64,000 nt of DNA from Asterias rubens (Eukaryota), in assembly GCF_902459465.1 (NCBI RefSeq), contig NC_047082.1, positions 8,122,001-8,186,000 of the forward strand. Direction: 5' to 3'. The notes under the pieces are model-generated. The model was not told the origin of the DNA and made no database searches. It saw only the letters and a program-made list of their open reading frames with translations. How positions within the stretch are numbered: position 1 is the stretch's first letter; the number at the start of each line of letters is the position of its first letter. A program made the translations under genes and the position numbers. Positions 2,894-17,760 of this stretch are shown here, one piece after another.

Positions 2894-3216
2894 GCAGCAG
2901 GTTTGGGGAGTTGTTACATAAGAGTGGACTAACCACTAGGACCTGGTTGTTAATGATTTCATGTCTAAAAGATGCAAGTACTGCTTCAGACCTCTTTATT
3001 CAAGTACATTTGTAGCAGCAGGTTTGGGGAGTTGTTACATAAGAGTGGACTAACCACTGGGACCTGGTTGTTTATATTTTCATGTTTAAAAGATGCAAGC
3101 ACTGCTTCAGACCTCTTTATTCAAGTACATTTTGTAGCAGCAGGTTTGGGGAGTTGTTACATAAGAGTGGACTAACCACTAGGACCTGGTTGTTAATATT
3201 TTTATGTCTAAAAGAT
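2894..3216. repeat. Tandem repeat, 121-122 bp unit, about 2.7 copies, just upstream of KHDRBS
   Basis: Units start at 2894, 3015 and 3137 (GCAGCAGGTTTGGGGAGTTGTTACATAAGAGTGGACTAACCACT...). Confidence 0.95.
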
Positions 3217-3802
3217 CAGTATAAATTGTGTTAAATTGTGTTTAATCGCATCAAAGTCAAACTTGATAAAATGTGAATAATTATAAACAATCGATGAACC
3301 CTGCCTGTGATTGTAATGTACCTGATACGCCTTCTCCATAGAGCTATATGGCCCTATGGCCTTCTCATAAACCATGACTCAATTCTCATTATGAACTTTT
3401 TAAAAACTATAGTTTGAGGCCTGAAAGACAGAATTGCTCCATTACAAGACTCGTTGTGGTCTATTTTCAAAAGTCGTGGGTTCGAATACAACCCATTGCA
3501 AGTTTTATTATGCCTTGTAATTTGTTTTCAGAAGTCGTGAAAGTACTGAGTATACAGTGCTAACAAACATCGGTAGGTTGCATATGGGTAAAACAAATTT
3601 ATTAACAAAACTAAATTAATATTATTTTTTACGCCCGATGCATTTTTTTTAAAACATCTATTATAATATCATGGTGGGTCGCAATTCTGTACTCTATACC
3701 GATACAAATTATACAATGAATAATACGCTGAATGCTACTTGATTGTTATAATTATTCTCCATGCTTGAGTTCAGTTGATCTTGGGTCGAGTTATGCCATA
3801 GA

Positions 3803-5448
3803 TTAAGAACTTGGTTGATCATGTGCGCTGATAGCCATGATGTAAAACTTGTATCCATCCGCAGTCTTCTTGAGGAGGAACAACCCGCTGTGAACAAACC
3901 AGAAGTGAAGAAACAAAAAAATTGTTTAGGAAGTTTGTTTATAATATTTTGTTGTCCCTGTTATTTAAAATTTCGTTTACAAGATCCAGAGATAATTAAT
4001 TTAAAACCACAGCTGAAACAAAATGGACTATGAATTGCTTTTTAGGATGAGTTTGGATGCGTTGATTTGAATGAGAGAAGAACAATAAAGAGTGTGACAA
4101 GCATTAAAATGTGATACGGCCATTGTGTTAGATCTTCATTTCAAACATTAAAGACAGTGGATACTATTGGTAACTACTCAAAATAATTTTAAGCGTAAAA
4201 TCTTACTTGGCAACGAGTAACGGGGAGAGAGGTTGTTAGTAAAGCTGAGGTGAAGACTAGTGTGCGTGTAACCGGTGGAAGTGCTAAGTAAACAAAAGTG
4301 CTAAAAACAATACTGTTTTGAGTGACTTACCTGCCATCCTTGTAGTTTACGCCCGACTCGTTGAAGAAATCAAAGTGAAGCGTGACGTATACATAATTTG
4401 CGTCTTCGTCCATGGGCACCACATCTTTGTATGTATTTTCGATGTGAGAGGCCGTCTCAGGTAGTGCTTCAAACATAACTTTTGCTCCTTCGTAACAAAA
4501 ATAATGTAAAGTTAGGACACATTGACCGAAAGTTTATTATGTGGACGTGATCACCAAAATAGCATTTCTTTGGAAAACCACTTGTTTTGTGATGAATGCT
4601 ATAATAAAAAAAATTGCCAAAATAAAACGGACAATACACACAAAGAAAACAGTTGATTTGATAGTTCCCCGCCCAATAGATGGTCGTAGAAAACTTAACA
4701 GTTTGCTTGTTTTGGGTCATTTTCATCACAGAGCAATGGGGCAGGAAATTCTGGTCCCCACGGCGAACGCACTAATTCATCTCGGATATCACCCTGTTTG
4801 AAATCGACCTCGTTCGACCCATCTATCTGGGACGGAAGCTCTGGTGCCGGAATTCCCTCAAACGAAGTCTTTTATCACATCAACCACGTGACAGTCTTCG
4901 ACAAATCAAAATGCATAATATATCCAATGAATCTTTTAATTCACACTATCAGCCCTGATACTTTTCGGTGGCAATGAAGTCAATTAAGGCGATGGTGTCC
5001 TTAGTGTCCTTAGAGAAATTTACAATTTCCTCATAGGGTACCCTTTACCAAAGAGAAAATGCATTGGTACCCTTGTCCTTTCAAAAACGAAGCATAAAAT
5101 GCCTGCTATTTGGCTTCTTCATATGAGTTAAAGTAAGCTTTACCTTCAAATCCACTTAAAAGTGGATATCCATCCATCACTATTGTTATCTCTGGGTCCA
5201 CTAGCGTCATAAGGGCGTCCGTGTCGTCGTTTACGCAGTACTGAACTTGCTGGTCCACAACAGACAGAATGGTTTCTGAGAGGAGCCAACAATAGTTTTC
5301 ATGTTTATTTGTGAATTGTTTCGGTTCCTGCTCGGTGTTCTGGTATGTTCCGACATTCTTCTTATTCTCAGTTGCTAACCACACTGGATTCACATAGGCC
5401 TATCACACCTAGCAACAGAAGCAGCCGCACGAAGTTGCCGAAAAACAT
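3803..5448 (-). CDS. NTF2/SnoaL-like (DUF4440-type) protein with predicted signal peptide, paralog A; exon 1 junction irregular, possibly a pseudogene
   Basis: Exons 5275-5144 (ETILSVVDQQ...DTDALMTLVDPEITIVMDGYPLLSGFE), 4487-4331 (...ENTYKDVVPMDEDANYVYVTLHFDFFNESGVNYKDG), 3887-3803 (GLFLLKKTADGYKFYIMAISAHDQPSS*). GT-AG phases 1 and 2. The signal-peptide exon starts at ATG 5448 (MFFGNFVRLLLLLGVIGLCES) but reaches TGA at 5370-5368 unless a weak donor at 5384 is used. Fold assignment is by motif recognition only. Confidence 0.75.
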
Positions 5449-6039
5449 CTTGTTTTTGTTACTTGACTTGAAAAACGAGTATTTTTGTATACTTATAAGT
5501 TTGTTTTACTGCAACGTACAGATCAAACATTCACCAGCACAGGTTTGGTTTTGATCTTAGTCTTAGTTGTCAGTCCCTTTTTATAGGCGTGTGTGGCAAT
5601 GTCCATCAGAAACTTGAGCTATGGTGAAATAACGAATCTCTCTTTTGCTCATTAGCGTTAAGGCTAATCTGTAATTAGAAAATAATAATAGTACAATTAT
5701 GAAGTCGGTTTTTAATATTTTGAGCTTGCTGTTGCGATGTGGAAAATCCCCACTAATTAAACAAATCGTACTTATAATCCACATGGATCATGTTGGACTA
5801 TCAGTTTCTTTCCTAGATTTAAACGTTAAATTAATGTTTGTCGAGGTATGCCCTCACGTGACTTGTGGTATGCCCTCACGTGATTCGCAGTTTCAACCGA
5901 TCGGTCTTTTCCACTAATCGATGTTTATTCAATAGCTCTTTTTTCTATGGATCAATGCAAAACACCGATCAATGTGTTGATCTGATTATTTGCCTGTTTG
6001 GCGTTCCATAGTGAGCTTTCCGACACTCGACACAAGAGG

Positions 6040-6130
6040 GCGCGCTAAACTTCAAGCTGTTCGTCGTTTGTTGTGTGTTGTGGCCGTGTATCTCTGCACA
6101 ATTTGGAGATCATTTGCTTCAACTTTAAAG
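6040..6130 (+). other. ARFRP1: Probable non-coding first exon of ARFRP1
   Basis: Donor AAG|GTAATT at 6130/6131 and acceptor TATTTCAG| at 6879/6880, upstream of the ATG. The 5' boundary is approximate. Confidence 0.55.
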
Positions 6131-6774
6131 GTAATTAAAAAATCTTGAATTGAATAAATTGTATGAGTTTGACTTGTTTCTAAGTAGGTTGAGAGTTGAG
6201 CCCGAATGTGGCCTTAATTGAACGTCTACTAACCCTATTCTAACAAAACAAAATAGTGCGAATTGCGGGGAGGAAAAACCAGCATGTCATTCTACTATTT
6301 TACTATAGTATAATTTCTAGTGCAACTGAACTGGGCCGGGACAACAGGGTAGGGGGTGTGGTGAGGAGGAGAGCCACGGATGTAGTATTCTACCTCCAAA
6401 AAAGGGTGGCAGGCAGAGCCTGCTGGGATCATTTTCAGTTTTCCACACCTCGCCACCAATCGACCTCTACCTTTTCACTCATTTTTCAAAAACTTAAAAA
6501 CGTATATCTCATAAGTCATATATAATGCAATGATGAGGTTTATTGCGATTAGCAAAATATCAAGAACCCACACAAAGGTATAGGCTTTGCGTGCGCGAGT
6601 CGTAGAAACTGCATTGAAACCGCCCCATATTCCTTCCCACAATGCATTGCATTTCTGAATTGCGATAAACCTTATGCCTCATTTACATTATAAATAATAT
6701 TATTTATAATTAGGCCTATTATTAGTATTACTAACACTAGTATACTGGTTATTTATTAATAATAATAATAATAA

Positions 6775-6832
6775 TACAATCGCACAAAAATAGTTAATGG
6801 CCTGACGTTTCGACCCTAGTAGAGTCTTTCTA
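6775..6832 (-). mobile_element. Truncated hammerhead-family copy in ARFRP1 intron 1
   Basis: Plus GGCCTGACGTTTCGACCCTAGTAGAGTCTTTC, the reverse complement of the family consensus; cut off within the catalytic core. Confidence 0.55.
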
Positions 6833-6895
6833 ATAGTATAATCACTAACAACCTATTTTGATGTATAATTGTATTTCAGATCGCAATTGTTCACC

Positions 6896-9800
6896 ATGTT
6901 CAGCTTACTGTATGGATTGTGGCAGTACATGTTTAGAAGAGATGAATATTTTGTGCTGATCCTTGGACTTGACAATGCTGGAAAATCGGTAAGTTCAAGG
7001 ATTTGTGCAAAGTTGTGAACGGCAAAATTGTTTAAGTAATAAGAATCCAATGAAAGTCTTGAATTCATTCAAATAGAAATTGTTTACAAGCTAGGTCATG
7101 CATTTTGTTTCATCCTGTTCAAGGTCACTGGCATAGCGCCCTCGTGTGCTTCTAATTAGTCAGTCAGTTTATATCACCATTGTCTCAGTTTGTTTACCTT
7201 ATTAGTCCTATGTCAAATAAGTACGGACATCGGTAAAATTTACTTATTGGAATTTTATGCATGGTTACGGTGAGATATTAATCTAATGCCAACGTGGCTT
7301 TAGCAACTGTGTGCCAGTAAAATTACTTTCCGTACAAAATATGACTGATCATTGTTCCATTGTTTGATGTATGACTTACGAATAGTGTTTTGAAATTTCA
7401 CCTTGCAGACTTTCCTTGAAACAACACAGATGCAATTCAATAAAAACTACAGAGGCTTGCCACTGGATAAAGTCACAACTACAGTTGGTCTCAATAGTAA
7501 GTAGGCCTAACAGTCGTTTATTCATTTATTTGTTCACACATTTAACAGCACAATTAGCACTAATAATGGGATGAAGGGGAAACAAGAAGGAAGAATATAT
7601 AATTATTTGATATACCATTACCTCACCATGCAATGCTTCAAAACAAGAAGAAATTATCAGTTTTAGATGTGGGAGGATATCCCCAATGGGAAAACCCAAA
7701 CAATCAGGTAGGAGCTGACAACTCAGTCCACATGCAAGGCTCCGGTCTGAGGTGGGATTTGAACCTGGGTCCACAGAGGTGAAAGGCAGGGAAAGAAACC
7801 GATGAGCCAATAACTATGTGTTGACCCCTTGCACTACTCGCAGCTCAATCACAGTTACTTTGCCGTTCATCATTTTGTTAATGTACCGCTAGTCTACAAA
7901 CTGAGCTGTGTTGTTCAAATAAGAGGGTTGATTTTACCATTGTCAATTTGTAACACTTTGAGTTCATGACACATGCAGACAAACTGTTGGATTTTAATCG
8001 ATGCCCCAATGGCATTGAAAAGCCTTTAAGAATAGGGTAGACTAAAGACACGTAGAGTAAAAGTTTAGTTTTTGTTTTCTTAATAGTTGGGAAGATCGAC
8101 ACTGGTCGGATACGTTTGATGTTTTGGGATCTTGGAGGACAGGAAGAGCTACAAGCATTATGGGATAAGGTAAGAAGGATTCATTCACAGGAAGCCATTC
8201 TAGTAAGCAGCTCTTTTGATGCAACACTAGATTAATGCACACTATGATTATCACTATAGATGATAACGAAACATTTGCTTGCTGGAATGGCGCTGTACAT
8301 AATTTACATTCCAACATAATAGAGCGTGAGGCTTCCAGTTCTCCATCTTGCACCTTGGGCGCTATAAAATCTTGAGTCTTATATTATTCCTCTATTCCAC
8401 CGAGTCTGTCTGGTGGCGAGAAGGCAGTCCAAATGCAGGTGGTGTATTGTTTAATCGATTATACAAAAAAACCAGCAAATTACTTTGTAAGGTTTTGAAC
8501 CTTGCTTTTTGAAAGTATACATGTAGTCAGGTGAGGTTTGTAAATCTCTTTTGAATTGTGTTGGTTCTGAAAAGAACCAGTGGCTGACAACGTTTCGATC
8601 AGTATGCTCTGATTGTCTTCAAGAATAACAGATCAGAGCATTAAAACATTGAGTTGTCATTCACTGGTACTTTTCAGAACCAACACTACTCAAAAGAGAT
8701 TTACAAATGGTGTTACCACAAACCTCACTGAATCCTTACTTTATCAACTTTTTGTATCTGTGTACTCTAGCTGTACAAGTTTATATTTTAGAATGAAAAA
8801 CCATAATCTCACCCTTGATATTCCTCTTTTCCCAAAATTGTTTTCAGTATTACGCAGAATCTCATGGACTGATCTATGTTGTGGATTCATCGGATAAGGA
8901 GAGATTAACGGAGTCAAGACTAGCATTTGGTAAGTATATTAAACACTTATTGTTAACACTAAACACCACAGAGCCTGACTATGTTACTCTTGAAGGCCTT
9001 GAAGTAACCCATGATCCCCAGAGTAATTGCGTGGTGCCGTTTTCAATGTTTCAATACAAGTTAACATTTTCCTCGTAGAAGAGCTAAGTCTTTGTTTTTC
9101 TTTTATCTTTTACAGGAAATTATTCCCCTGAAGTTTAAATCTTTGCTTTTGTGATTTCCATATTGTGTGTATTTCAAATATTGTCTATGTATTTCTATGC
9201 TACAATGTGACTGATTGACATTTTACAATAACTGTGATATTTCCATTTGAATGTCTGCTATTTATGAAATATTTCGTTGCCATTTTTCTGTAGCCTTCTT
9301 TGCTTGGATCTATTGTTTTTTATTTGAAAATTGATAATTCTGCTTTGTTTTCTGTGCTTTATATTTTAATTTTTATGCAGTTGTATAACTGCAACTCTGT
9401 TGACTTGATAATGAAATCTACCCATATTGCCATATTTGATGATTGTATTGTCTTCTTATTTTGATTATAACATGACTGCCCAACTATGTTGACTTGATAA
9501 TCAAATCTAGCCATATTGCCATATTTGATGATTGTATTGTCTTCTTATTTTGATTATAACATGACTGTCTTTGCTTCCTAAGCATGATGAGATTTAAACT
9601 GAATTTCTTCTGTAATTTTTGCATATATTGAATGTACAATACTAATATGACTTGAGTATGATTTCTACCAATATTGCCATTCTTAGTTGCCATGTTTGTT
9701 GATTGAATTGTCTTTTAATTTTTATTATGACATGACTGTGTTTGCTCCACAAAATTGATGATATTTAACGTGAATTTCTTTTATCATTTTTCATATTGAA

Positions 9801-11507
9801 TATACATTACTGACATGAGATTTTTGTGATAACTTTTCTGTTTAAAAGTAATTTCTTTATTTTTCATGTATATTGATGATATTTTCTAACTTAAGTTGTA
9901 GGCTTATACCATTTTATCAGATCTTTTAATTGTTTATTCTTTATACCTTTTAAGTATAAGCTATAGGCCTAGTTGGGGATGTTGATTTCTGAAAGCAATC
10001 AAAAACAATGATTGTTTGTTTTCTAAGTACAGACTTTTTAAAATTTCAGTTTCATTGCATTTAAGGAGGTCTCGTAATTAGTCATAAGTATTTGTTGCCA
10101 CAACTTTATAAATGAGAAAATAAAACTATAACCGTTGCAAAATAGAACCAAAAGGACCTATGGTAAAAATGCAAACAATCAATATTAGCCTGACGTTTCG
10201 ACCTTAGCAGAGTCTTTCTCAAAGGCTAAATGGCAACACAACACAACACACATGAACAGGAGTCGTTGTATTACATTTTAGCCTTTTAAAAAGACTCTGC
10301 TTGGGTTGAAGTCTCAGGCTATTAACGATTTGTTTGCAAAATAGTTTATACTAATACTTTTGATTTGCTTTCTTCCAGACATGATGCTATCAAGTGAAGC
10401 TCTTGATGGTGTGCCTTTACTTGTTCTTGCCAATAAACAAGACTTACAGGTGAGCGTCTTATAAGACTTTTGGTTGAACAGAGAATAATTGTCAAGATCA
10501 GGACTTGAACCTGTGGCATATGGATTAAATTTATTACCAACCAAATTTCCATTTGTGCATATTGCTTGTTTCTGGTATTCAGCTGTTGTTTGCTTATCCT
10601 GAAGCTCAGGTGGAAATTTGGTTGGTAATTCGGTTTTTATCAAGGAAGAAATTTCATGCTAAGCAAATTTGTGTGCTTAGCAGCTCTATGAAAATGGGCT
10701 CTGGGCACTAATGTATTAAAGTGCATTCATATATCATTGTAAAATGCGCTATATAAAAAAACTTGTTACTACTATTATCAGATTCTTATGTTTGTTTGAA
10801 CAGGATGTGTTGAACATGTCTGAAATCAAGGCAGAATTTAATCAAAGTTCAAGAAGTATTGGAAAGAGAGATTGTCATATACAGCCAGTGTCTGCGCTCA
10901 CAGGGTGAGTTGGGTAGAAACGAATCAGGTTTCTTAAAAACTCAATTCCTGGTTCGTACTTCCTGCGAATGCGATGCAAGTTTGATGCCACAAATTCACA
11001 ACAAACAGTTCAGAAAATTTAGATGTGTATATGATTTAAGGCATTGCAGGGTGAGGTTTGCAGTTACACCATGCGTGTATCTACTTGCCAGGTACAGTTT
11101 GTTCTTTAGAGAGCTGTCTTTCTATATTCTACTACCGCGGAGTAGAGATGTGCTGAACACCTGCGAAACATTCACAGTGAAAACTGAGCTGTGACGCCAA
11201 AATTGTCATCGCATTCGCATGAAGTATGAACCTGAATTAATGCAGACACATTTTGTGAAAGGGAATCACAAACAAACTTAACTTGGAGTCTTCTTCTGGT
11301 TTTTAAATGCTTTTAATTTACTTTCAACTATGCTTGGTTTAACATCAAGATGAATAGAAGATGGGTAAAACAGAGTCTTCTTTAAGATAATTCTTAGAAT
11401 TATTTTGTATTTGCAGCCAAGGAGTAAACGAAGGTATTGATTGGCTAGTCGAATGCGTCCAACGAAACTCTTATCGGAGACCACCACATACCAAAGAAAT
11501 CAGCTGA
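6896..11507 (+). CDS. ARFRP1: ADP-ribosylation factor-related protein 1, 202 aa, complete
   Basis: Coding exons 6896-6988, 7409-7496, 8087-8169, 8848-8929, 10379-10449, 10804-10904, 11417-11507, all GT-AG and in phase. Motifs MFSLLYGLWQYMFRRDEY, GLDNAGKS, TTTVGLNIG, WDLGGQEELQALW, LANKQD, SALTG and C-terminal RRPPHTKEIS*. Confidence 0.98.
7630..7812 (-). mobile_element. tRNA-headed SINE in ARFRP1 intron; similar heads at about 1315-1400 (-), 15730-15800 and 20730-20775
   Basis: Minus strand TGGCTCATCGG..CCCAGGTTCAAATCCCACCTCAG (A/B boxes) continuing into non-tRNA body. Confidence 0.6.
8525..8735. mobile_element. Inverted pair of Penelope-like terminal-repeat fragments with a central hammerhead-like motif (second family)
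   Basis: GTTGGTTCTGAAAAGAACCAGTG at about 8560-8582 faces CACTGGTACTTTTCAGAACCAAC at about 8661-8683. Minus strand TTGAAGA-C-AATCAGAGCATACTGATC-GAAACGT at 8590-8622. Related copies at about 615-680, 32105-32205 and 41305-41420. Confidence 0.6.
9398..9570. repeat. Tandem duplication of about 90 bp in ARFRP1 intron 5, with a degenerate third copy at about 9660-9740
   Basis: GTTGACTTGATAATNAAATCTANCCATATTGCCATATTTGATGATTGTATTGTCTTCTTATTTTGATTATAACATGACTG occurs twice. Confidence 0.9.
10185..10229 (-). ncRNA. Minimal type I hammerhead ribozyme motif (U3-A8 variant), Penelope-like/retrozyme-type
   Basis: Minus strand TTAGCCT-TTGAGAA-A-GAC TCTGCTAAG GTC-GAAA-CG-TC-AGGCTAA: 7-bp stem I, core UUGAGAA, stem II, GAAA, self-complementary ACGU in place of stem III, GUC cleavage triplet. 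Confidence 0.7.
10951..11232. mobile_element. MITE in the last ARFRP1 intron
   Basis: TIRs GGTTCGTACTTCCTGCGAATGCGATG / CATCGCATTCGCATGAAGTATGAACC. Confidence 0.75.
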
Positions 11508-11984
11508 GGTCAAAGGGTCAAGATCTCAAACTTAACCCTTTAAAAGGTGAAAGCTCTCGAAGTACACATCTAAACTCAGGAAGTCATCTGGCTGGTCAAC
11601 AATAAGTCTTGTACCATAGCTTCATAACATGCTACCACAATTTAAAATGTGTTTATGGGTTTAGAGAACAGAGGCGTCAGACCAGTCAATTACAAAATTA
11701 TTTATGAAGATACACTTCCGGGGTTATGATGATCGAGATCGTACACCACTGGGAAGGAGGTTGCAGAGCATAAAGTCAGCTGAGGTCGTAAATTAGAAGT
11801 TTGGTATCGCGGCTTCAAAGCATGGCAATACAATTGTGTTAAAGATTTAAAGACCAGAAGCACCAGACGAGTCAAGTGCCAGTGGTCAATCTTTAGTGAC
11901 TTGAGAAACACTATTGAAATTGTTCTGTAAATATGGTTATATGGTAAATCAATTTGATCGCAGTTGGCATTGGTGTTACATTTT

Positions 11985-12335
11985 GGGGTAAACTTCTGTA
12001 AACACAATGTCCACAGATATACATTAAACTTACACCGTTTGAAGATAATGATAGTAGAATACGTACCTCAAAATATTAGATGCTGAGGTGCTGTAGTTTT
12101 TGAGAAATTAGTAAAACAATGTCATGAAAATACGTTTTTACATGCTTAAATAATTTTCGTCTCATGATCAGTGAGACGAAAATGATTTTCATGACATTGT
12201 TTTACTTACTCAAAAAGTACAGCACCTCAGCAAGTAATATTTTCAGGGAAGCTTTCTACTATCATTATCTTCAAACTATGTAAGTTTGGTGTAGATCTGT
12301 GGACATTGTGTTTTTTGTCAGATCCTTAGTAATTT
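11985..12335. mobile_element. K2 MITE copy with eroded ends, between the ARFRP1 and paralog B 3' ends
   Basis: AACACAATGTCCACAGAT ... ATCTGTGGACATTGTGTT inverted arms and K2 interior. Confidence 0.75.
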
Positions 12336-12416
12336 AAATTGCAAATTTTACATTAGAGAAGGAATGATATGATGGCTGTGTGCTATACCTGTATTATTTA
12401 TACCAGGGTATAGCCT

Positions 12417-12592
12417 CAGGCCTGATACTTCCTGGAGGCAACGAAGGCGATTGCCTCCATGCCCCCAGGTCATTGCCTTGGTGCCCTAAAAATTCTCCAG
12501 TAGAATTTTACAATTTCCTCATAGGGTGCCTATTAGAGAGGAGAAAATGCCTTGGTGCCCTAGCCCTTTCAATAACGAAGCATACAGGCCTG
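12417..12592. mobile_element. Unclassified 175-190 bp dispersed repeat bounded by CAGGCCTG
   Basis: CAGGCCTG..GGAGGCAACGAAGGCGATTGCCTCC..TTGGTGCCCT..CATAGGGTGCC..AACGAAGCATACAGGCCTG. Copies at 44007-44194, about 58144-58341 (rc), 29065-29192 (rc), 37318-37470 (rc), 31875-31990 and 4975-5105. Confidence 0.75.
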
Positions 12593-12615
12593 TAACCACA
12601 TGATCACAGGGTGCA

Positions 12616-15600
12616 CTATTCAGCTGTTGACTGACCATGTTTGTTAAACATCGTCAAGTAAAACTTGTATCCATCTGTAGTGTCCCTGAAGACGAACAAT
12701 CCACTGTAAACAAACCAAATAAATAAATAGCTTTTAGGCAAATGTATTAAGTTATAGTCGGCACTTTCTCTGTTTGTTTTTATCTGTCTCTTCAGGGTGC
12801 GGGCTACAATAAACTTTTTCCCCCAGGGGCAGTTGCCACCTACTTCTGGGTCGAAAAGGGGCTGATACCCCCTTTACAGTCCATACGGTGTGAGTGTCAA
12901 AATATATTAACACGATTAAAAGTGTTGCCAACATTCGGTCAACCAGCGCGGCTAATATGTATCAACAATAGGAATGTCTATTGCATAAAAAAACGAGATA
13001 ATACCAATTTATACAAAGGGCGAGTACACAAGAGTTCACGCCAGAATTCGATTTAGAAAGACGGCAAGCTTACCTTCCATCCATAACATTTTCATCCAAT
13101 TCGTTGTAAAAATCAAAATGGAGACTGATGAACACATACTCTGCATCTTTGTCCATGGGCTGAATCTCTTTATAAGTATTCTCGACACGAGTTACTCCCT
13201 CAAATATGAGGTGAAAAACCATGTTTTCCCCTGCCGTAGATTTACAAAGTACATACATAAAAGATAATAAATTTGCATTGATGGGGATAAAGAACATTAC
13301 TTATGGTTTGACCCATACACCGATGTGTGTTAGCACTGTGTACCCAGTTGGTAAGACACTCTCTAAGACACTCTCTAAGTGCAAGGGTCGTGGGTTCGAA
13401 TCTCACCCGAGAAACATGTCTGTGATATTTTTTTTTCACAGGACTCGGGGGGAAAGTGCTGAGTATACAGTGCTAACACACATCGGTGTATGGGTAAAAA
13501 ACAAATATAGTTACCAACATATCTTATGTTTAAAACAAAAATATTTTTCACCGAGCTTGGGAAAAATACTGAGTAGGTGTTTTACAGTGCTAACACACAT
13601 CGGTCTGTATTATGGGTCAAACGAATAGTATTGTTCTTTTCCCCCCGTAGTGACGCACCTTTTTTTGGCAATAATATTGGACAACCATTAGGCCTAGCCT
13701 ACTGAGCCAATTCTGGGCCAAATATTGCAATGGTGGCATGCCACAATGGCCCAATACAGAAGTGCCAGCAACGGCATGAACGTTATTGGGCCCGTGAGGT
13801 GTGGCAACTGTACTGGGCCGCTTAAAATTAGTGTGTATTCTCAGTGACGCTGCCAACATCTGGTCAGCCAAAATAGAAGAAAGAAAAAATAACCTCTGTA
13901 CGGTTCTGTTAACTAATGCGATGGGGAGTGTGGCAATCGCACTAGGATAAAATAAGAAAAAAGATTATTCAATAAAAATAAAAAAAGGATATTAAATAAA
14001 TTAAACTAATTAGTTACTTTGCAATAAATAAAATATACACTAATAAAGTGTATTTGTCCATGATATATAAAAAATAAAATAAAAACTAAGAAAACATCAG
14101 TAATAAATAAATTAATTAAAAACAAAACTCTTAAAATGCATGAAATAACAATTAATTAATAGGCTAATAAGTTGTCGGTTTTCTCAAAATGCCGGTACCG
14201 TCAGTTTCAATTATTTGCATCCGGCCTAATTCATTTTCTGGGCCAATAGGCCTTCTGTTTTTTTTATTATTTTAGCGGCACACCATTTTGGCAAAATGGA
14301 ATAGAAAACCTTCTCTGGGCCAATACCGGTTTTGTAGCGGCGCACCATTGGGCCGGCACTGAACCGATGGTCATAATATGCAAATTTCAAGGGAGGGTGT
14401 CAGCAGTGTCAAGTTAAGATATGGCTTAAGATTGCGACACATTTTTAGAACTGAACAAGTAGCGTAATTTGTTTGGATCTTTTTGCTATTAATTGTTACT
14501 CCCCAAAAATGTGTAGGTTTGCTTTTTGACGAGCTTTTTTGATATGTTTTGATTACAATGATGTGGCCAATTGGGCCAATAGTGAAATACTGTAATGGCC
14601 CAACACAGAAGTTATTGACCCATCATCGATGCGGCATGAATGTTATTGACCCATCATCGATGCGGCATGATTGTTATTGACCCATCATCGATGCGGCATG
14701 AATGTTATTGACCCATCATCGATGCGGCATGAATGTTATTGACCCATCATCGATGCGGCATGAATGTTATTGACCCATCATCGATGCGGCATGAATGTTA
14801 TTGACCCATCATCGATGCGGCATGAATTTTATTGACCCATCATCGATGCGGCATGAATGTTATTGACCCATCATCGATGCGGCATGAATGTTATTGACCC
14901 ATCATCGATGCGGCATGAATGTTATTGACCCATCATCGATGCGGCATGAATGTTATTGACCCATCATCGATGCGGCATGAATGTTATTGACCCATCATCG
15001 ATGCGGCATGAATGTTATTGGGCCTGTACTGGGTGAGTTATGTCAATTGTACTTAGCCAACCCTTATATGGACCGATACACCACACATCTTTAGGTCTTT
15101 ATTCGCCAGTAACGGGGCCAATACGTTTGATGGGTTGCACTATTTGCAAAGGTCATGGGTTCGAATCCCGACCGACTGTAAAATGCATTCTGAAAGAGTC
15201 TAGTAGGCCTATATTGCTAACATCAGTGTTGGGTAAAACCGCTATTGAAGTTTTGCCTGATATAGGCATAACCATATATTAAACTCGCTAACATGAATTG
15301 TAATATTACTTGTTGATATAACCTAGACATTCAGTAAATCGAAATCGTACATCCGGATCTCTGACTTGCAATTTTGTTTTTCAAAATTGGTCAATATTAG
15401 ACTAGGGATAATTTCAGACGGGGTATATGTTGTAAATTTTTACAAACCATGCTACAATTTAGCAGGGGACCCTTGTGAAATTGCTCTTGTGTGAATGGGC
15501 CTACCTTGTTCTGCAGAAATAGGTGGCAAACCGTCTATTAGTAACTGACCATCCGGATGAACTACGGCCGATAAGGCATCCATGTCACCCTTGTAACTCG

Positions 15601-16277
15601 CCTGAAGAAATCGGTCAAAAACGGACACGATCTTTTCTGAAATGCCAACAAATTAATGATGTCTGTAACATTGTTCATCACATTATTAGGTGGAAATTTG
15701 AATAAACAAACAGGGAGACCGCCATCATAGGGCTTGTGGTTAATCCAGACTCTCGTTGGTTCAAATCTCGCTCTGGTCGATGTTTCTTTATTCAAATCTA
15801 AATAATAAAAAAAATCAATACTATACAAAACAAACAAAAATAAACGGCTGAACAAATAGTTTGACAATTAGCAAGAAGATGTCATGTAAAATACATTGTT
15901 AAAACGTAATGTCGAATTCAAACTCTGGTGTTTCTGATCAGCAGAGTGTGGGTTCGAATCCCCAGCCGTGACACTTGTGTTCTTAACTATTGCTTCGTCC
16001 TTCGGATGGGACGTAAAGCCGTTGGTCCCATGTGTTGTGTAACGCATGTTAAAGAACCCAGTGCACTTTTCGAAAAGAGAAGGGGTTCGCCCGGGTGTTC
16101 CTGGCTGTGGCTGCTGTATATGCGCCGTAGCACCTTGTAAACCATTATAAGGTCCTAAATAAATGGGTCTCAAAATTCATCACTGCAATTACATATCTTT
16201 CTGAAAGTTTGTATTATACTCAGCGCCTTGAGTACCTTGTTTGGTAGATACGTGCGCTGTATAAGACTTCGATATTC

Positions 16278-16343
<66 letters not shown>

Positions 16344-16584
16344 GATCGGCATCAGTTTGCAAAAAAAATCTACACTTTCATCAATAGAGTGACGTCATAG
16401 AAATAGTTAAAAATTCTACGTGTCCTTAATGTATACAAACGATAAGACTCCTCAACTGCAGTGAGTACTCGTATTCACCTCGAAGATCACTTGCTCGTTC
16501 CCTCTGATATTCAGCTGCATCTCCACTTGATTCACATTTCACACCAAGCAACAGAAGCATGGGCACGAGGTTGACGAGAATCAT
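12616..16584 (-). CDS. NTF2/SnoaL-like (DUF4440-type) secreted protein, paralog B, 160 aa, intact
   Basis: Exons 16584-16479 (MILVNLVPMLLLLGVKCESSGDAAEYQRERASDLR), 15636-15505 (KIVSVFDRFLQASYKGDMDALSAVVHPDGQLLIDGLPPISAEQ), 13230-13074 (...ENTYKEIQPMDKDAEYVFISLHFDFYNELDENVMDG), 12703-12616 (GLFVFRDTTDGYKFYLTMFNKHGQSTAE*). All GT-AG and in phase. Internal exons are 132 and 157 nt, the same as paralog A. Confidence 0.88.
13330..13620 (+). mobile_element. tRNA-headed SINE, second family; related copy at about 3445-3600
   Basis: CCCAGTTGGTAAG..GTGGGTTCGAATCTCACC (A/B boxes), then GTGCTGAGTATACAGTGCTAACACACATCGGTGTATGGGTAAAA, with the tail partly duplicated at 13580-13615. Confidence 0.7.
14611..15020. 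repeat. 31-bp minisatellite, 13 near-identical units, in paralog B intron 2
   Basis: Unit GTTATTGACCCATCATCGATGCGGCATGAAT; I saw only two single-base variants (units 2 and 8). Confidence 0.97.
15910..16343 (+). mobile_element. tRNA-derived SINE with Deu/Nin-like central domain and (TTA)n tail
   Basis: B-box GGTTCGAATCC at about 15950. Centre CGGATGGGACGTAAAGCCGTTGGTCCC..AAGAACCCAGTGCACTTTTCGAAAAGAGAAGGGGTTCGCCCGGGTGTTCCTGG. Tail of about 22 TTA units at 16278-16343. Confidence 0.8.
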
Positions 16585-17495
16585 GTTGTTCTTGTAGCGT
16601 GCTTTTGATCGTGTTGTAGAAAACGATTGTTTTGGATTCATCTGTGAATGTGACTGCACGTGCATCGGTTTTCTAGCGTAAGACGGACAGTGACATTGGT
16701 ATCTCCTCCTAATATTTACTTGCATCACGTCATGTGATCCGTGACGTCACACGGTTACGAAAATCCATGGGAGCCTGGACTTTAAAATGAGCTTTTTAAA
16801 TGAGCTTTTTATTGCCCATCATCTTGAATTTGTTCATTAGGATTTGTTATGATGGACTTGGATTTAAAGTACAAATCTCCCAATTAACTGATCATAATTG
16901 TAGCAATCTATATAATTATTTTTTAATCTTTTGAGCTGCGCACAATATTTGAAACATTTTACATCACTTCGTATCTTGGTGGAAAGACGGTGTTCTGGGA
17001 GCACGACAAAGTGCAGAGTCGGAGGCACTCGTCGGAGAGGTGGCTCGTGGGGGCCAGCGGCGCTCCGTCCCCCACGAGCGTTACGTGAAGACCCGGTCCG
17101 TTATTAAAGTACGGCCGAGGAGGGCTGCGGGGCTCTCGCCCGGCTGCAGTGGGGGCCCTCTGTGAACAACTTTTATTTGAAAAAGAAAAGAACAAGAAGA
17201 AGGAGACCCTAACCACTACACCTATACCCTAACACTATCAAGACAGATTAATGTTATTCTTAGTAACTATGTTTTTATAATACAGGTTCAATTATAATGT
17301 ATACGACACTTAATCACAGTTATTTGTATAAGAAATGAATGTGTCACGTAAAGTTGAACATCGCAATCTTAGGTACATCGTGGGAACTCAACATCTTAAG
17401 TCGAAACCCTTTCAGAAAGAATCAATAAGTTCTTACACATGACCCAAGTCTTATATAAATTGGGAATTTTCTTTTTAAATGACAGCAGTCTGTAT

Positions 17496-17760
17496 TTAAA
17501 GGCAGTGGACAGTATTGGTAACTACTCAAAATAATTATTGGCATACAATTTGATTTCGAGACCTCAAGTTTAGGTCTCGAAATCAACCATCTAAACGCAC
17601 ACAACTTCGTGTGACAATGGTGTTTTTTTCTTTCATTGTTATCTCGCAAGTTTGACGACCAATTGAGCTCAAATTTTCACAGGTTTGTTATTTGATGCAC
17701 ATGTTGAGATACACCAAGTGAGAAGACTGGTCTTTGACAATTACCAATAGTGTCCAGTGT
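17496..17760. mobile_element. Internally deleted K1 MITE
   Basis: TTAAAGGCAGTGGACAGTATTGGTA ... TTACCAATAGTGTCCAG. Further K1 fragments at about 4148-4235, 23845-24150, 25840-25935, 27590-27770, 32870-33110, 43547-43790 and 44640-44760. Confidence 0.8.

What the first reader, a model, noticed from the sequence alone, without database searches (positions are those of the whole stretch)
3803..16584. Pair of uncharacterised secreted NTF2/SnoaL-like genes sandwiching ARFRP1
Seen: two minus-strand four-exon genes share internal exon sizes (132, 157 nt), intron phases (1,1,2) and hydrophobic N-termini. They are roughly 40% identical by eye, with shared blocks DxDAL, DGxP, ENTYKxxxPMDxDAxYV, LHFDFxNE and DGSGLF..T.DGYKFY. 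The ORF track shows only fragments of them. Known: the helix-DxDAL / beta-sheet / G-(L/Y)-hydrophobic-K-x-x-DG-(W/Y)K pattern typifies NTF2-like folds (SnoaL cyclases, ketosteroid isomerase, DUF4440), whose pockets bind hydrophobic ligands. Inference: these could be extracellular carriers or enzymes for steroid/saponin or polyketide-type molecules. The function is unknown.
Basis: partly seen in the sequence, partly recalled or inferred. Interest (0 to 1): 0.72.

Follow-up and report, generated by a model that had tools for sequence, protein, structure and literature searches.

The report
Secreted NTF2-like gene family in starfish
Two starfish (Asterias rubens) genes flanking an Arf-type GTPase gene encode small, probably secreted proteins with a well-known bacterial-type small-molecule-pocket fold (NTF2-like); they belong to an undescribed family of at least nine genes whose ligand and role are unknown.

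Summary
Two minus-strand four-exon genes sit at 3803-5448 (gene A) and 12616-16584 (gene B). Both have internal exons of 132 and 157 nt and intron phases 1,1,2. They are 44% identical.

The window is Asterias rubens. The genes are LOC117304802 and LOC117304501, both annotated "uncharacterized".

The NTF2/SnoaL reading is supported:
- Weak Pfam hits to A and B become clear at family level (DUF4440 in 10 of 12 relatives, best E 5e-10).
- The family profile matches PDB 3hx8 at E 2e-11.
- AlphaFold models have pLDDT 90 and 86, and fold searches give TM up to 0.84 to DUF4440/YybH proteins.

Three corrections:
1. This is not a pair. Seven more complete paralogs lie on another contig, with the same exon plan and a strongly conserved exon 1 (signal peptide plus acidic linker).
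2. Transcripts read on to 5356 and carry 23 nt that are absent from the whole reference genome. The reference copy of exon 1 is therefore deleted or mis-assembled.
3. No catalytic residue is conserved across the family, which favours a binding protein over an enzyme.

The function is unproven. The scan index lists only this same stretch. Verdict: a new member of a known kind, of moderate interest.

The parts
3803..3887 (-). Gene A (LOC117304802) exon 4, coding part with the stop codon. The 3' UTR continues to at least 3600.
   Evidence: Splicing. RNA contigs X1 and X5 join 3887 to 4331, and the X1 contig runs on to 3600.
4331..4487 (-). Gene A exon 3 (157 nt).
   Evidence: The junctions on both sides are seen in RNA contigs of two studies. 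Identical in NCBI's P0002.
5144..5275 (-). Gene A exon 2 (132 nt).
5356..5448 (-). Gene A exon 1 as far as the reference holds it, with the ATG at 5448 and the signal peptide. The transcripts continue upstream as 5' UTR to at least 5593-5803. In the reference the ATG frame meets TGA at 5370-5368.
   Evidence: Alignment with the exon 1 of the paralogs is.
5354..5356 (-). Breakpoint. Here the transcripts carry 23 nt (the family-typical end of exon 1), and presumably the donor, which the reference lacks. DNA-like contigs of other runs also stop or diverge here.
   Evidence: tables 5, 5c and 8. The 23-mer is absent from the window and from the whole genome.
6869..10908 (+). Arf-family GTPase gene (ARFRP1-like) lying between the two genes. 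Only exon fragments were checked.
   Evidence: Pfam Arf hits to fragments 6869-7015, 8116-8232 and 8815-8940, in colinear profile order. The ARFRP1 subtype rests on recall of motifs only.
12616..12703 (-). Gene B (LOC117304501) exon 4 with the stop codon.
   Evidence: Identical in NCBI's P0003.
13074..13230 (-). Gene B exon 3 (157 nt).
15505..15636 (-). Gene B exon 2 (132 nt).
16479..16584 (-). Gene B exon 1 (106 nt): signal peptide plus acidic linker, ending CTTCGAG|gtgaat as in all the paralogs. NCBI starts 27 codons earlier, at an in-frame ATG at 16665.

Best explanation
Genes A and B are two members of a sea-star multigene family of small proteins (about 160 aa). Each protein has a cleavable signal peptide, then a short acidic linker that extends the first helix, then one NTF2-like (DUF4440/SnoaL-type) cone domain.

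Shown: the gene structures, the paralogy, the fold, the conserved signal exon, purifying selection on the family (measured on gene B and the contig-12 paralogs), and transcription of gene A.

Inferred: the proteins leave the cell and hold a small hydrophobic molecule in the pocket between the helices and the sheet. That would make them carriers or sequestering proteins rather than enzymes, because no polar residue that could be catalytic is conserved across the family. The ligand is unknown.

The reference copy of gene A has a damaged exon 1. It has one extra base and has lost the last 23 nt and the donor. This is either a deletion allele or an assembly error, because transcripts from other animals carry the intact form.
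For: Identity and paralogy:
-.

Fold:
- The models have pLDDT 90.3 and 86.2.
- Foldseek against the PDB puts 3d9r, 3hx8 and designed NTF2-scaffold steroid or vitamin-D binders on top, at TM 0.72-0.78.
- AFDB clusters return DUF4440 and SnoaL proteins.
- The ESM Atlas gives TM 0.84 to YybH/DUF4440 clusters.

Sequence:
- P0002 hits SnoaL_2 at E 8e-4 and P0003 hits SnoaL_3 at E 0.05.
- DUF4440 hits 10 of 12 family members, best E 5e-10.
- The family profile matches 3hx8 at E 2e-11, positions 15-134 against residues 5-126.

Family:
- Seven complete paralogs lie on contig 12, with exons of 106(97)/132/157/82-88 nt.
- Their exon 1 encodes MFLVNLVPLLLLVGVLTQS plus an acidic linker ending LR.
- Named relatives occur only in Asterias amurensis and Acanthaster planci, and most have hydrophobic N-termini.

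Selection:
- Nei-Gojobori dN/dS of the mature part is 0.26-0.42 for seven diverged pairs among gene B and the contig-12 paralogs; gene A was not in the comparison, and the near-identical pair p1/p2 gives 0.8 on almost no substitutions.

Expression:
- Spliced contigs in two runs from two studies match exons 2-4 and the 3' UTR with no mismatches.

No conserved catalytic residue:
- Across the family only three glycines are invariant or nearly so.
- The Asp/Glu before the conserved Gly varies as D/E/Q/P/C.
Against: - A and B themselves stay below Pfam's gathering scores.
- No signal-peptide predictor was available; secretion rests on hydropathy and on conservation of exon 1.
- No protein-level, tissue or ligand data exist.
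- The mature domains contain at most one cysteine, so they have no disulfides, which is unusual for extracellular proteins.
- Within the Asterias-type subfamily several polar residues are invariant (E55, D71, N87, D107, Y109, K110, Q121 in gene A model numbering). A subfamily-specific active site is therefore not excluded.
- NCBI's models differ at the N-terminus: gene A is annotated without a signal peptide, and gene B with a 27-aa extension.
Confidence: 0.55

Rival explanations
1. They are secreted enzymes of the NTF2-like class (isomerase, cyclase, dehydratase or SgcJ/EcaC-type) acting on an extracellular steroid, saponin or polyketide-like substrate.
For: - The fold is shared with ketosteroid isomerase, LinA, SnoaL-like cyclases and SgcJ.
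- TIGR02246 (SgcJ/EcaC) hits 5 of 12 family members, best E 1e-4.
- Polar residues are invariant within the Asterias-type subfamily.
Against: - No polar residue is invariant across the whole family.
- The acidic position before the conserved glycine varies as D/E/Q/P/C, and the helix-1 aromatic position varies as Y/W/L/I/A.
- SnoaL proper (PF07366) is hit by only 1 of 12 members, at E 0.07.
- The closest solved structures (3hx8, 3d9r) have no known activity.
Confidence: 0.2
2. They act through protein contacts rather than a ligand pocket. They could be oligomeric scaffolds or defence, immune or signalling effectors of a birth-and-death gene family.
For: - NTF2-like domains often oligomerise; CaMKII hub domains are among the fold matches.
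- The genes sit in tandem arrays with diverged mature domains (about 40% identity) behind a conserved signal exon.
Against: - The mature domains are under purifying selection (dN/dS about 0.3), with no overall sign of diversifying selection.
- No partner is known, and no oligomer test was run.
Confidence: 0.12
3. Gene A, or both genes, are decaying copies without function.
For: The reference copy of gene A lacks the end of exon 1 and its donor, and is out of frame there.
Against: - Transcripts with an intact-looking exon 1 and perfect exons 2-4 occur in two studies.
- Gene B and seven paralogs have complete ORFs.
- dN/dS is about 0.3.
Confidence: 0.05

Closest known systems
DUF4440 (PF14534) / YybH-type NTF2-like proteins, such as PDB 3hx8 (Mesorhizobium loti 'putative ketosteroid isomerase') and 3d9r
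   Same: - Same fold and length.
- The family profile aligns to 3hx8 end to end at E 2e-11.
- The C-terminal motif G-K-x-hydrophobic-x-W/L-K-K..D.YK.Y...N is shared.
- TM is 0.72-0.84.
   Different: - These are animal genes with introns, an N-terminal signal peptide and an acidic helical linker.
- Identity to the bacterial proteins is only 13-20%.
- A and B do not reach Pfam's cut-offs on their own.
- The bacterial relatives themselves have no assigned function.
Ketosteroid isomerase (Comamonas / Pseudomonas KSI)
   Same: NTF2-like cone. The family profile matches KSI chains weakly (E 5e-4 to 0.02, mostly the N-terminal two thirds). Foldseek gives TM about 0.6.
   Different: KSI's catalytic residues (Tyr14, Asp38, Asp99, recalled from knowledge) have no conserved counterparts in the family alignment. 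KSI is cytosolic and bacterial.
SnoaL-type polyketide cyclases and SgcJ/EcaC proteins
   Same: Same superfamily. Weak hits to SnoaL_2, SnoaL_3 and TIGR02246.
   Different: SnoaL proper (PF07366) matches only 1 of 12 members, at E 0.07. There is no biosynthetic gene cluster context, and the proteins are secreted.
Uncharacterized sea-star proteins: Asterias amurensis XP_071801121 and XP_071807653; Acanthaster planci LOC110980129, LOC110978028, LOC110979863 and LOC110981138
   Same: True family members found by an exhaustive profile search. They have the same domain, and most have signal peptides. XP_071801121 is the ortholog of A. rubens contig-12 paralog 5.
   Different: They are 19-44% identical to A and B. 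The Acanthaster set is closer to canonical DUF4440 (IWKK..MYN). None has been studied.

Membership tests
NTF2-like fold superfamily | An alpha+beta cone: three N-terminal helices packed against a curved antiparallel sheet of five to six strands. | tested here: met
   DSSP on the gene A model gives H3-15, H19-23, E26-34, H42-51, E59-68, E76-86, E92-105, E108-118. Gene B has the same order. At least 500 PDB matches have E <= 1e-3, and all the top ones are NTF2-like.
Pfam DUF4440 (PF14534) / SnoaL_2 (PF12680) | The protein itself scores at or above the curated gathering cut-off. | tested here: not met
   - Gene A: SnoaL_2 20.3 bits against 27; DUF4440 12.7 bits against 25.2.
- Gene B: SnoaL_3 14.3 bits against 22; SnoaL_2 12.7 bits against 27.
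Pfam DUF4440 (PF14534) / SnoaL_2 (PF12680) | Homology can be shown through intermediate relatives or a family profile. | tested here: met
   DUF4440 hits 10 of 12 family members, best E 5e-10. PF14534 is precomputed for P0025 and P0019. The family profile matches 3hx8 at E 2e-11 over its full length.
Ketosteroid isomerase (EC 5.3.3.1) | A conserved general base (Asp38) and oxyanion-hole residues (Tyr14, Asp99); numbering recalled from knowledge. | tested here: inconclusive
   The family alignment has no invariant polar column. The candidate equivalent columns vary. Residue equivalence to KSI was not established by a structural superposition that I could inspect.
SnoaL polyketide cyclase (PF07366) | A significant match to the SnoaL model. 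| tested here: not met
   1 of 12 members, E 0.069.
Classically secreted proteins | An N-terminal signal peptide (charged n-region, h-region of 10-15 hydrophobic residues, small residues at -3 and -1) and no other membrane segment. | tested here: met
- Nothing above 1.7 occurs elsewhere in the proteins.
- ..GV.C|ES and ..TQS|G fit the -3/-1 rule by eye.
- No SignalP run was possible.
- For gene A in the reference, the link from the signal peptide to the mature domain is broken.
ARFRP1 (the gene lying between A and B) | An Arf-family GTPase with ARFRP1-specific sequence. | tested here: inconclusive
   The Arf family is met (PF00025, E 1.5e-5 for fragment 8815-8940, with colinear weaker hits). 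The ARFRP1 subtype rests only on recalled similarity of motifs.

The most novel reading that the evidence does not exclude
The family would be the first known extracellular NTF2-like carrier system in an animal: a sea-star-specific set of secreted pocket proteins that bind the animal's own membrane-active steroid glycosides (asterosaponins) or other hydrophobic signals. The carriers would serve transport, self-protection or chemical communication, and the different paralogs would be tuned to different ligands.
Probability: 0.12. Interest if true: 0.6.

Novelty: new member of a known kind. Interest (0 to 1): 0.35.

Why it matters
NTF2-like and DUF4440 proteins are abundant in bacteria and mostly have no known function. 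Here a divergent branch has become a signal-peptide-bearing, tandemly expanded family in sea stars, and no paper in the searched library mentions it. If the proteins carry sterols, saponins or pheromone-like molecules, they would give a handle on echinoderm chemical defence or signalling. On the practical side, the work corrects two NCBI gene models and flags a local defect or deletion allele in the reference assembly.

Tried and rejected
- **Word-indexed protein searches** returned almost only A. rubens proteins and were of little use for mapping the family's distribution.
- **P0006** (1160 aa, 15 weak stretches) is a repetitive false positive.
- **The ENA contig encoding P0001**, which seems to carry a different sequence upstream of gene A exon 2, could not be fetched. 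The other haplotype was therefore not read.
- **The crown-of-thorns "spine-secreted protein family"** paper (PMC11957666) describes another, Acanthaster-only family said to resemble no known fold. It was not used.
- **Literature searches** for the LOC and XP identifiers, for DUF4440 with echinoderm, and for NTF2-like secreted invertebrate proteins found nothing relevant.
- **tRNA and Rfam scans** of 3000-17500 found nothing at gathering scores.
  - Word shares only show that RNA-like runs hold gene B (0.27-0.32 in two runs).
  - One run holds 0.85 of the words, so it holds the intron too.
- **NCBI's first exon for gene A** (ATG 6009-6007, GC donor at 5993) has no cover in the two spliced RNA contigs.
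- **A recent bacterial transfer origin** was considered and dropped. Identity to bacterial proteins is only 13-20% and the genes have conserved introns.
- **No complex prediction** was run, because no binding claim is made.
Full report
**What is there.** I spliced the two minus-strand genes from the window sequence.

- Gene A has exons 5448-5385, 5275-5144, 4487-4331 and 3887-3803.
- Gene B has exons 16584-16479, 15636-15505, 13230-13074 and 12703-12616.
- A database search with the exon 2 ORF found identical proteins named by NCBI as Asterias rubens LOC117304802 (P0002, 129 aa) and LOC117304501 (P0003, 187 aa), both "uncharacterized". Their exons 2-4 are the same as mine.
- The plus-strand gene between them gives colinear Pfam Arf hits. 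Its ARFRP1 subtype rests on recalled motif similarity only.

**Fold and family.**

- Alone, A and B give only sub-threshold Pfam hits: SnoaL_2 at E 8e-4 and DUF4440 at E 0.19 for A; SnoaL_3 at E 0.05 for B.
- An exhaustive HMMER search of 1.84 billion representatives with the A+B profile found only 26 proteins at E <= 1e-3.
- The full-length hits that carry names are all from sea stars (Asterias amurensis, Acanthaster planci). Three more come from unnamed transcript-like contigs. One hit, P0006, is a repeat artefact.
- On a 12-sequence alignment (A2), DUF4440 is hit by 10 of 12 members (best E 5e-10) and SnoaL_2 by 9 of 12.
- The family profile matches the solved DUF4440-type protein 3hx8 end to end at E 2e-11.
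- AlphaFold2 models are confident: gene A has pLDDT 90.3 and pTM 0.82; gene B has pLDDT 86.2 and pTM 0.78. Both show three helices on a curved sheet.
- Foldseek against the PDB, AFDB clusters, Swiss-Prot and the ESM Atlas all return NTF2-like proteins. These include 3d9r, 3hx8, YybH, CaMKII hubs, dioxygenase beta subunits, KSI and designed steroid or vitamin-D binders on this scaffold. TM reaches 0.84.

**Not a pair but a family.**

- A six-frame search of the same genome found two clusters on contig 12, at about 16.76-16.78 Mb and 16.946-16.957 Mb.
- From the fetched DNA I built seven complete four-exon genes of 157-159 aa and found one partial copy.
- All have exons of 106 (one of 97), 132, 157 and 82-88 nt.
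- Their exon 1 encodes a nearly invariant signal peptide (MFLVNLVPLLLLVGVLTQS) plus an acidic linker ending in LR, with the donor TTCGAG|gtRaat. Gene B has exactly this.
- In a maximum-likelihood tree, A and B are sisters (support 85/84) inside this Asterias-type clade. A. amurensis XP_071801121 is the ortholog of contig-12 paralog 5.
- Mature domains evolve under purifying selection: seven diverged pairs among gene B and the contig-12 paralogs give dN/dS 0.26-0.42, and gene A was not in the comparison.
- In the more diverged pairs (mature dS 1.4-1.7), synonymous divergence of exon 1 is four to six times lower than that of the rest (0.26-0.37). This points to gene conversion or nucleotide-level constraint on the signal exon.

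**Gene A exon 1.** Contigs of four public runs were laid on 3600-6300.

- Two runs from different studies hold spliced contigs that match exons 2-4 and the 3' UTR without a mismatch. They confirm junctions 3887|4331 and 4487|5144.
- They run colinear with the genome from at least 5593 (one from 5803) down to 5356. They then carry 23 letters that are not in the reference, and then exon 2.
- Those 23 letters end in GATCTTCGAA, the family-typical end of exon 1. They occur nowhere in the window or in the whole assembly.
- The X1 contig also has one base fewer than the reference between 5356 and 5593.
- *Inference:* this missing base lies between about 5399 and 5371, because only then does the ATG-5448 frame join the exon 2 frame. 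In that case exon 1 is 93 - 1 + 23 = 115 nt, phase 1, giving about 162 aa with a linker ..QASDDLR-K that parallels gene B's ..RASDLR-E. As it stands, the reference frame stops at TGA 5370-5368.
- DNA-like contigs of two other runs end at 5354 or continue for 139-194 letters unlike the reference (table 8).
- The reference thus carries a deletion (end of exon 1, donor and part of intron 1) plus a 1-nt difference. This is either a real allele or an assembly fault.
- NCBI's model avoids the problem with a 5' exon (ATG 6009-6007, GC donor). That exon has no cover in the two spliced contigs.

**Secretion.**

In two further relatives (P0025, P0029) and in NCBI's gene B model it lies behind an N-terminal extension.
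- Three relatives and NCBI's gene A model lack it. No second hydrophobic segment occurs in any of these proteins.
- An N-x-S/T sequon recurs in the loop after the fourth strand in about half of the Asterias-type sequences (by eye).
- No signal-peptide predictor was available.
NCBI's upstream ATG (16665) would bury the signal peptide; which one is used depends on the unknown transcription start.
- In the gene B model the linker prolongs helix 1 to 30 residues.

**Mechanism.**

- *Shown:* an NTF2-like cone behind a signal peptide, in a constrained, expressed, tandemly expanded family.
- *Inferred:* a secreted binder of a small hydrophobic molecule.
- The argument against an enzyme is that only three glycines are invariant or nearly so across the family. 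The positions that would correspond to catalytic acid and aromatic residues of KSI-type enzymes also vary.
- The argument is not conclusive. The Asterias-type subfamily keeps several invariant polar residues (E55, D71, N87, D107, Y109, K110, Q121), and I could not inspect the pocket.
- The ligand (steroid, saponin, lipid, quinone) is pure conjecture.

**Novelty.**

- No paper in the searched library mentions these loci, or DUF4440 in echinoderms.
- The fold and superfamily are well known. What is new is the secreted, sea-star-restricted expansion with a conserved signal-plus-linker exon.
- I rate it a new member of a known kind, of moderate interest.
- The scan's own index holds only this same stretch.

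Noticed in passing
window 4146-4236 and 4965-5146 (introns of gene A): Summed contig depth rises to 10^4-10^6 in all four runs, against tens elsewhere, and many contigs end at 4148/4188 and 5014/5096. These are copies of highly repeated dispersed elements.
   Followed up: no
G000 contig 12, 16.758-16.779 Mb and 16.946-16.957 Mb (loci L013-L018), and gene B exon 1 (window 16479-16584): Across the more diverged paralog pairs, exon 1 (signal peptide plus linker) has synonymous divergence of 0.26-0.37, against 1.4-1.7 for the mature exons. This suggests gene conversion or strong nucleotide-level constraint on the 5' exon.
   Followed up: partly
window 5992-6009: NCBI's model of LOC117304802 starts with a short exon (MERQT) that needs a GC donor. 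It is not covered by the spliced RNA contigs of runs X1 and X5, and it looks like a patch around the damaged exon 1.
   Followed up: partly
window about 16283-16344 (intron 1 of gene B): A long perfect (TAA)n/(ATT)n microsatellite of about 60 nt.
   Followed up: no
window about 13375-13440 and 15950-16010 (introns of gene B): Stretches with GGTTCGAACCC-like, tRNA T-arm-like motifs, possibly tRNA-derived SINE fragments. ARAGORN finds no tRNA gene there.
   Followed up: partly
An Rfam scan of 3000-17500 at gathering scores found no family there. Permissive thresholds were not tried.
   Followed up: partly
window 16585-16665: An in-frame upstream ATG lies 27 codons before the family-typical start of gene B, with no stop between them. 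If it is transcribed, it would turn the signal peptide into an internal segment.
   Followed up: no
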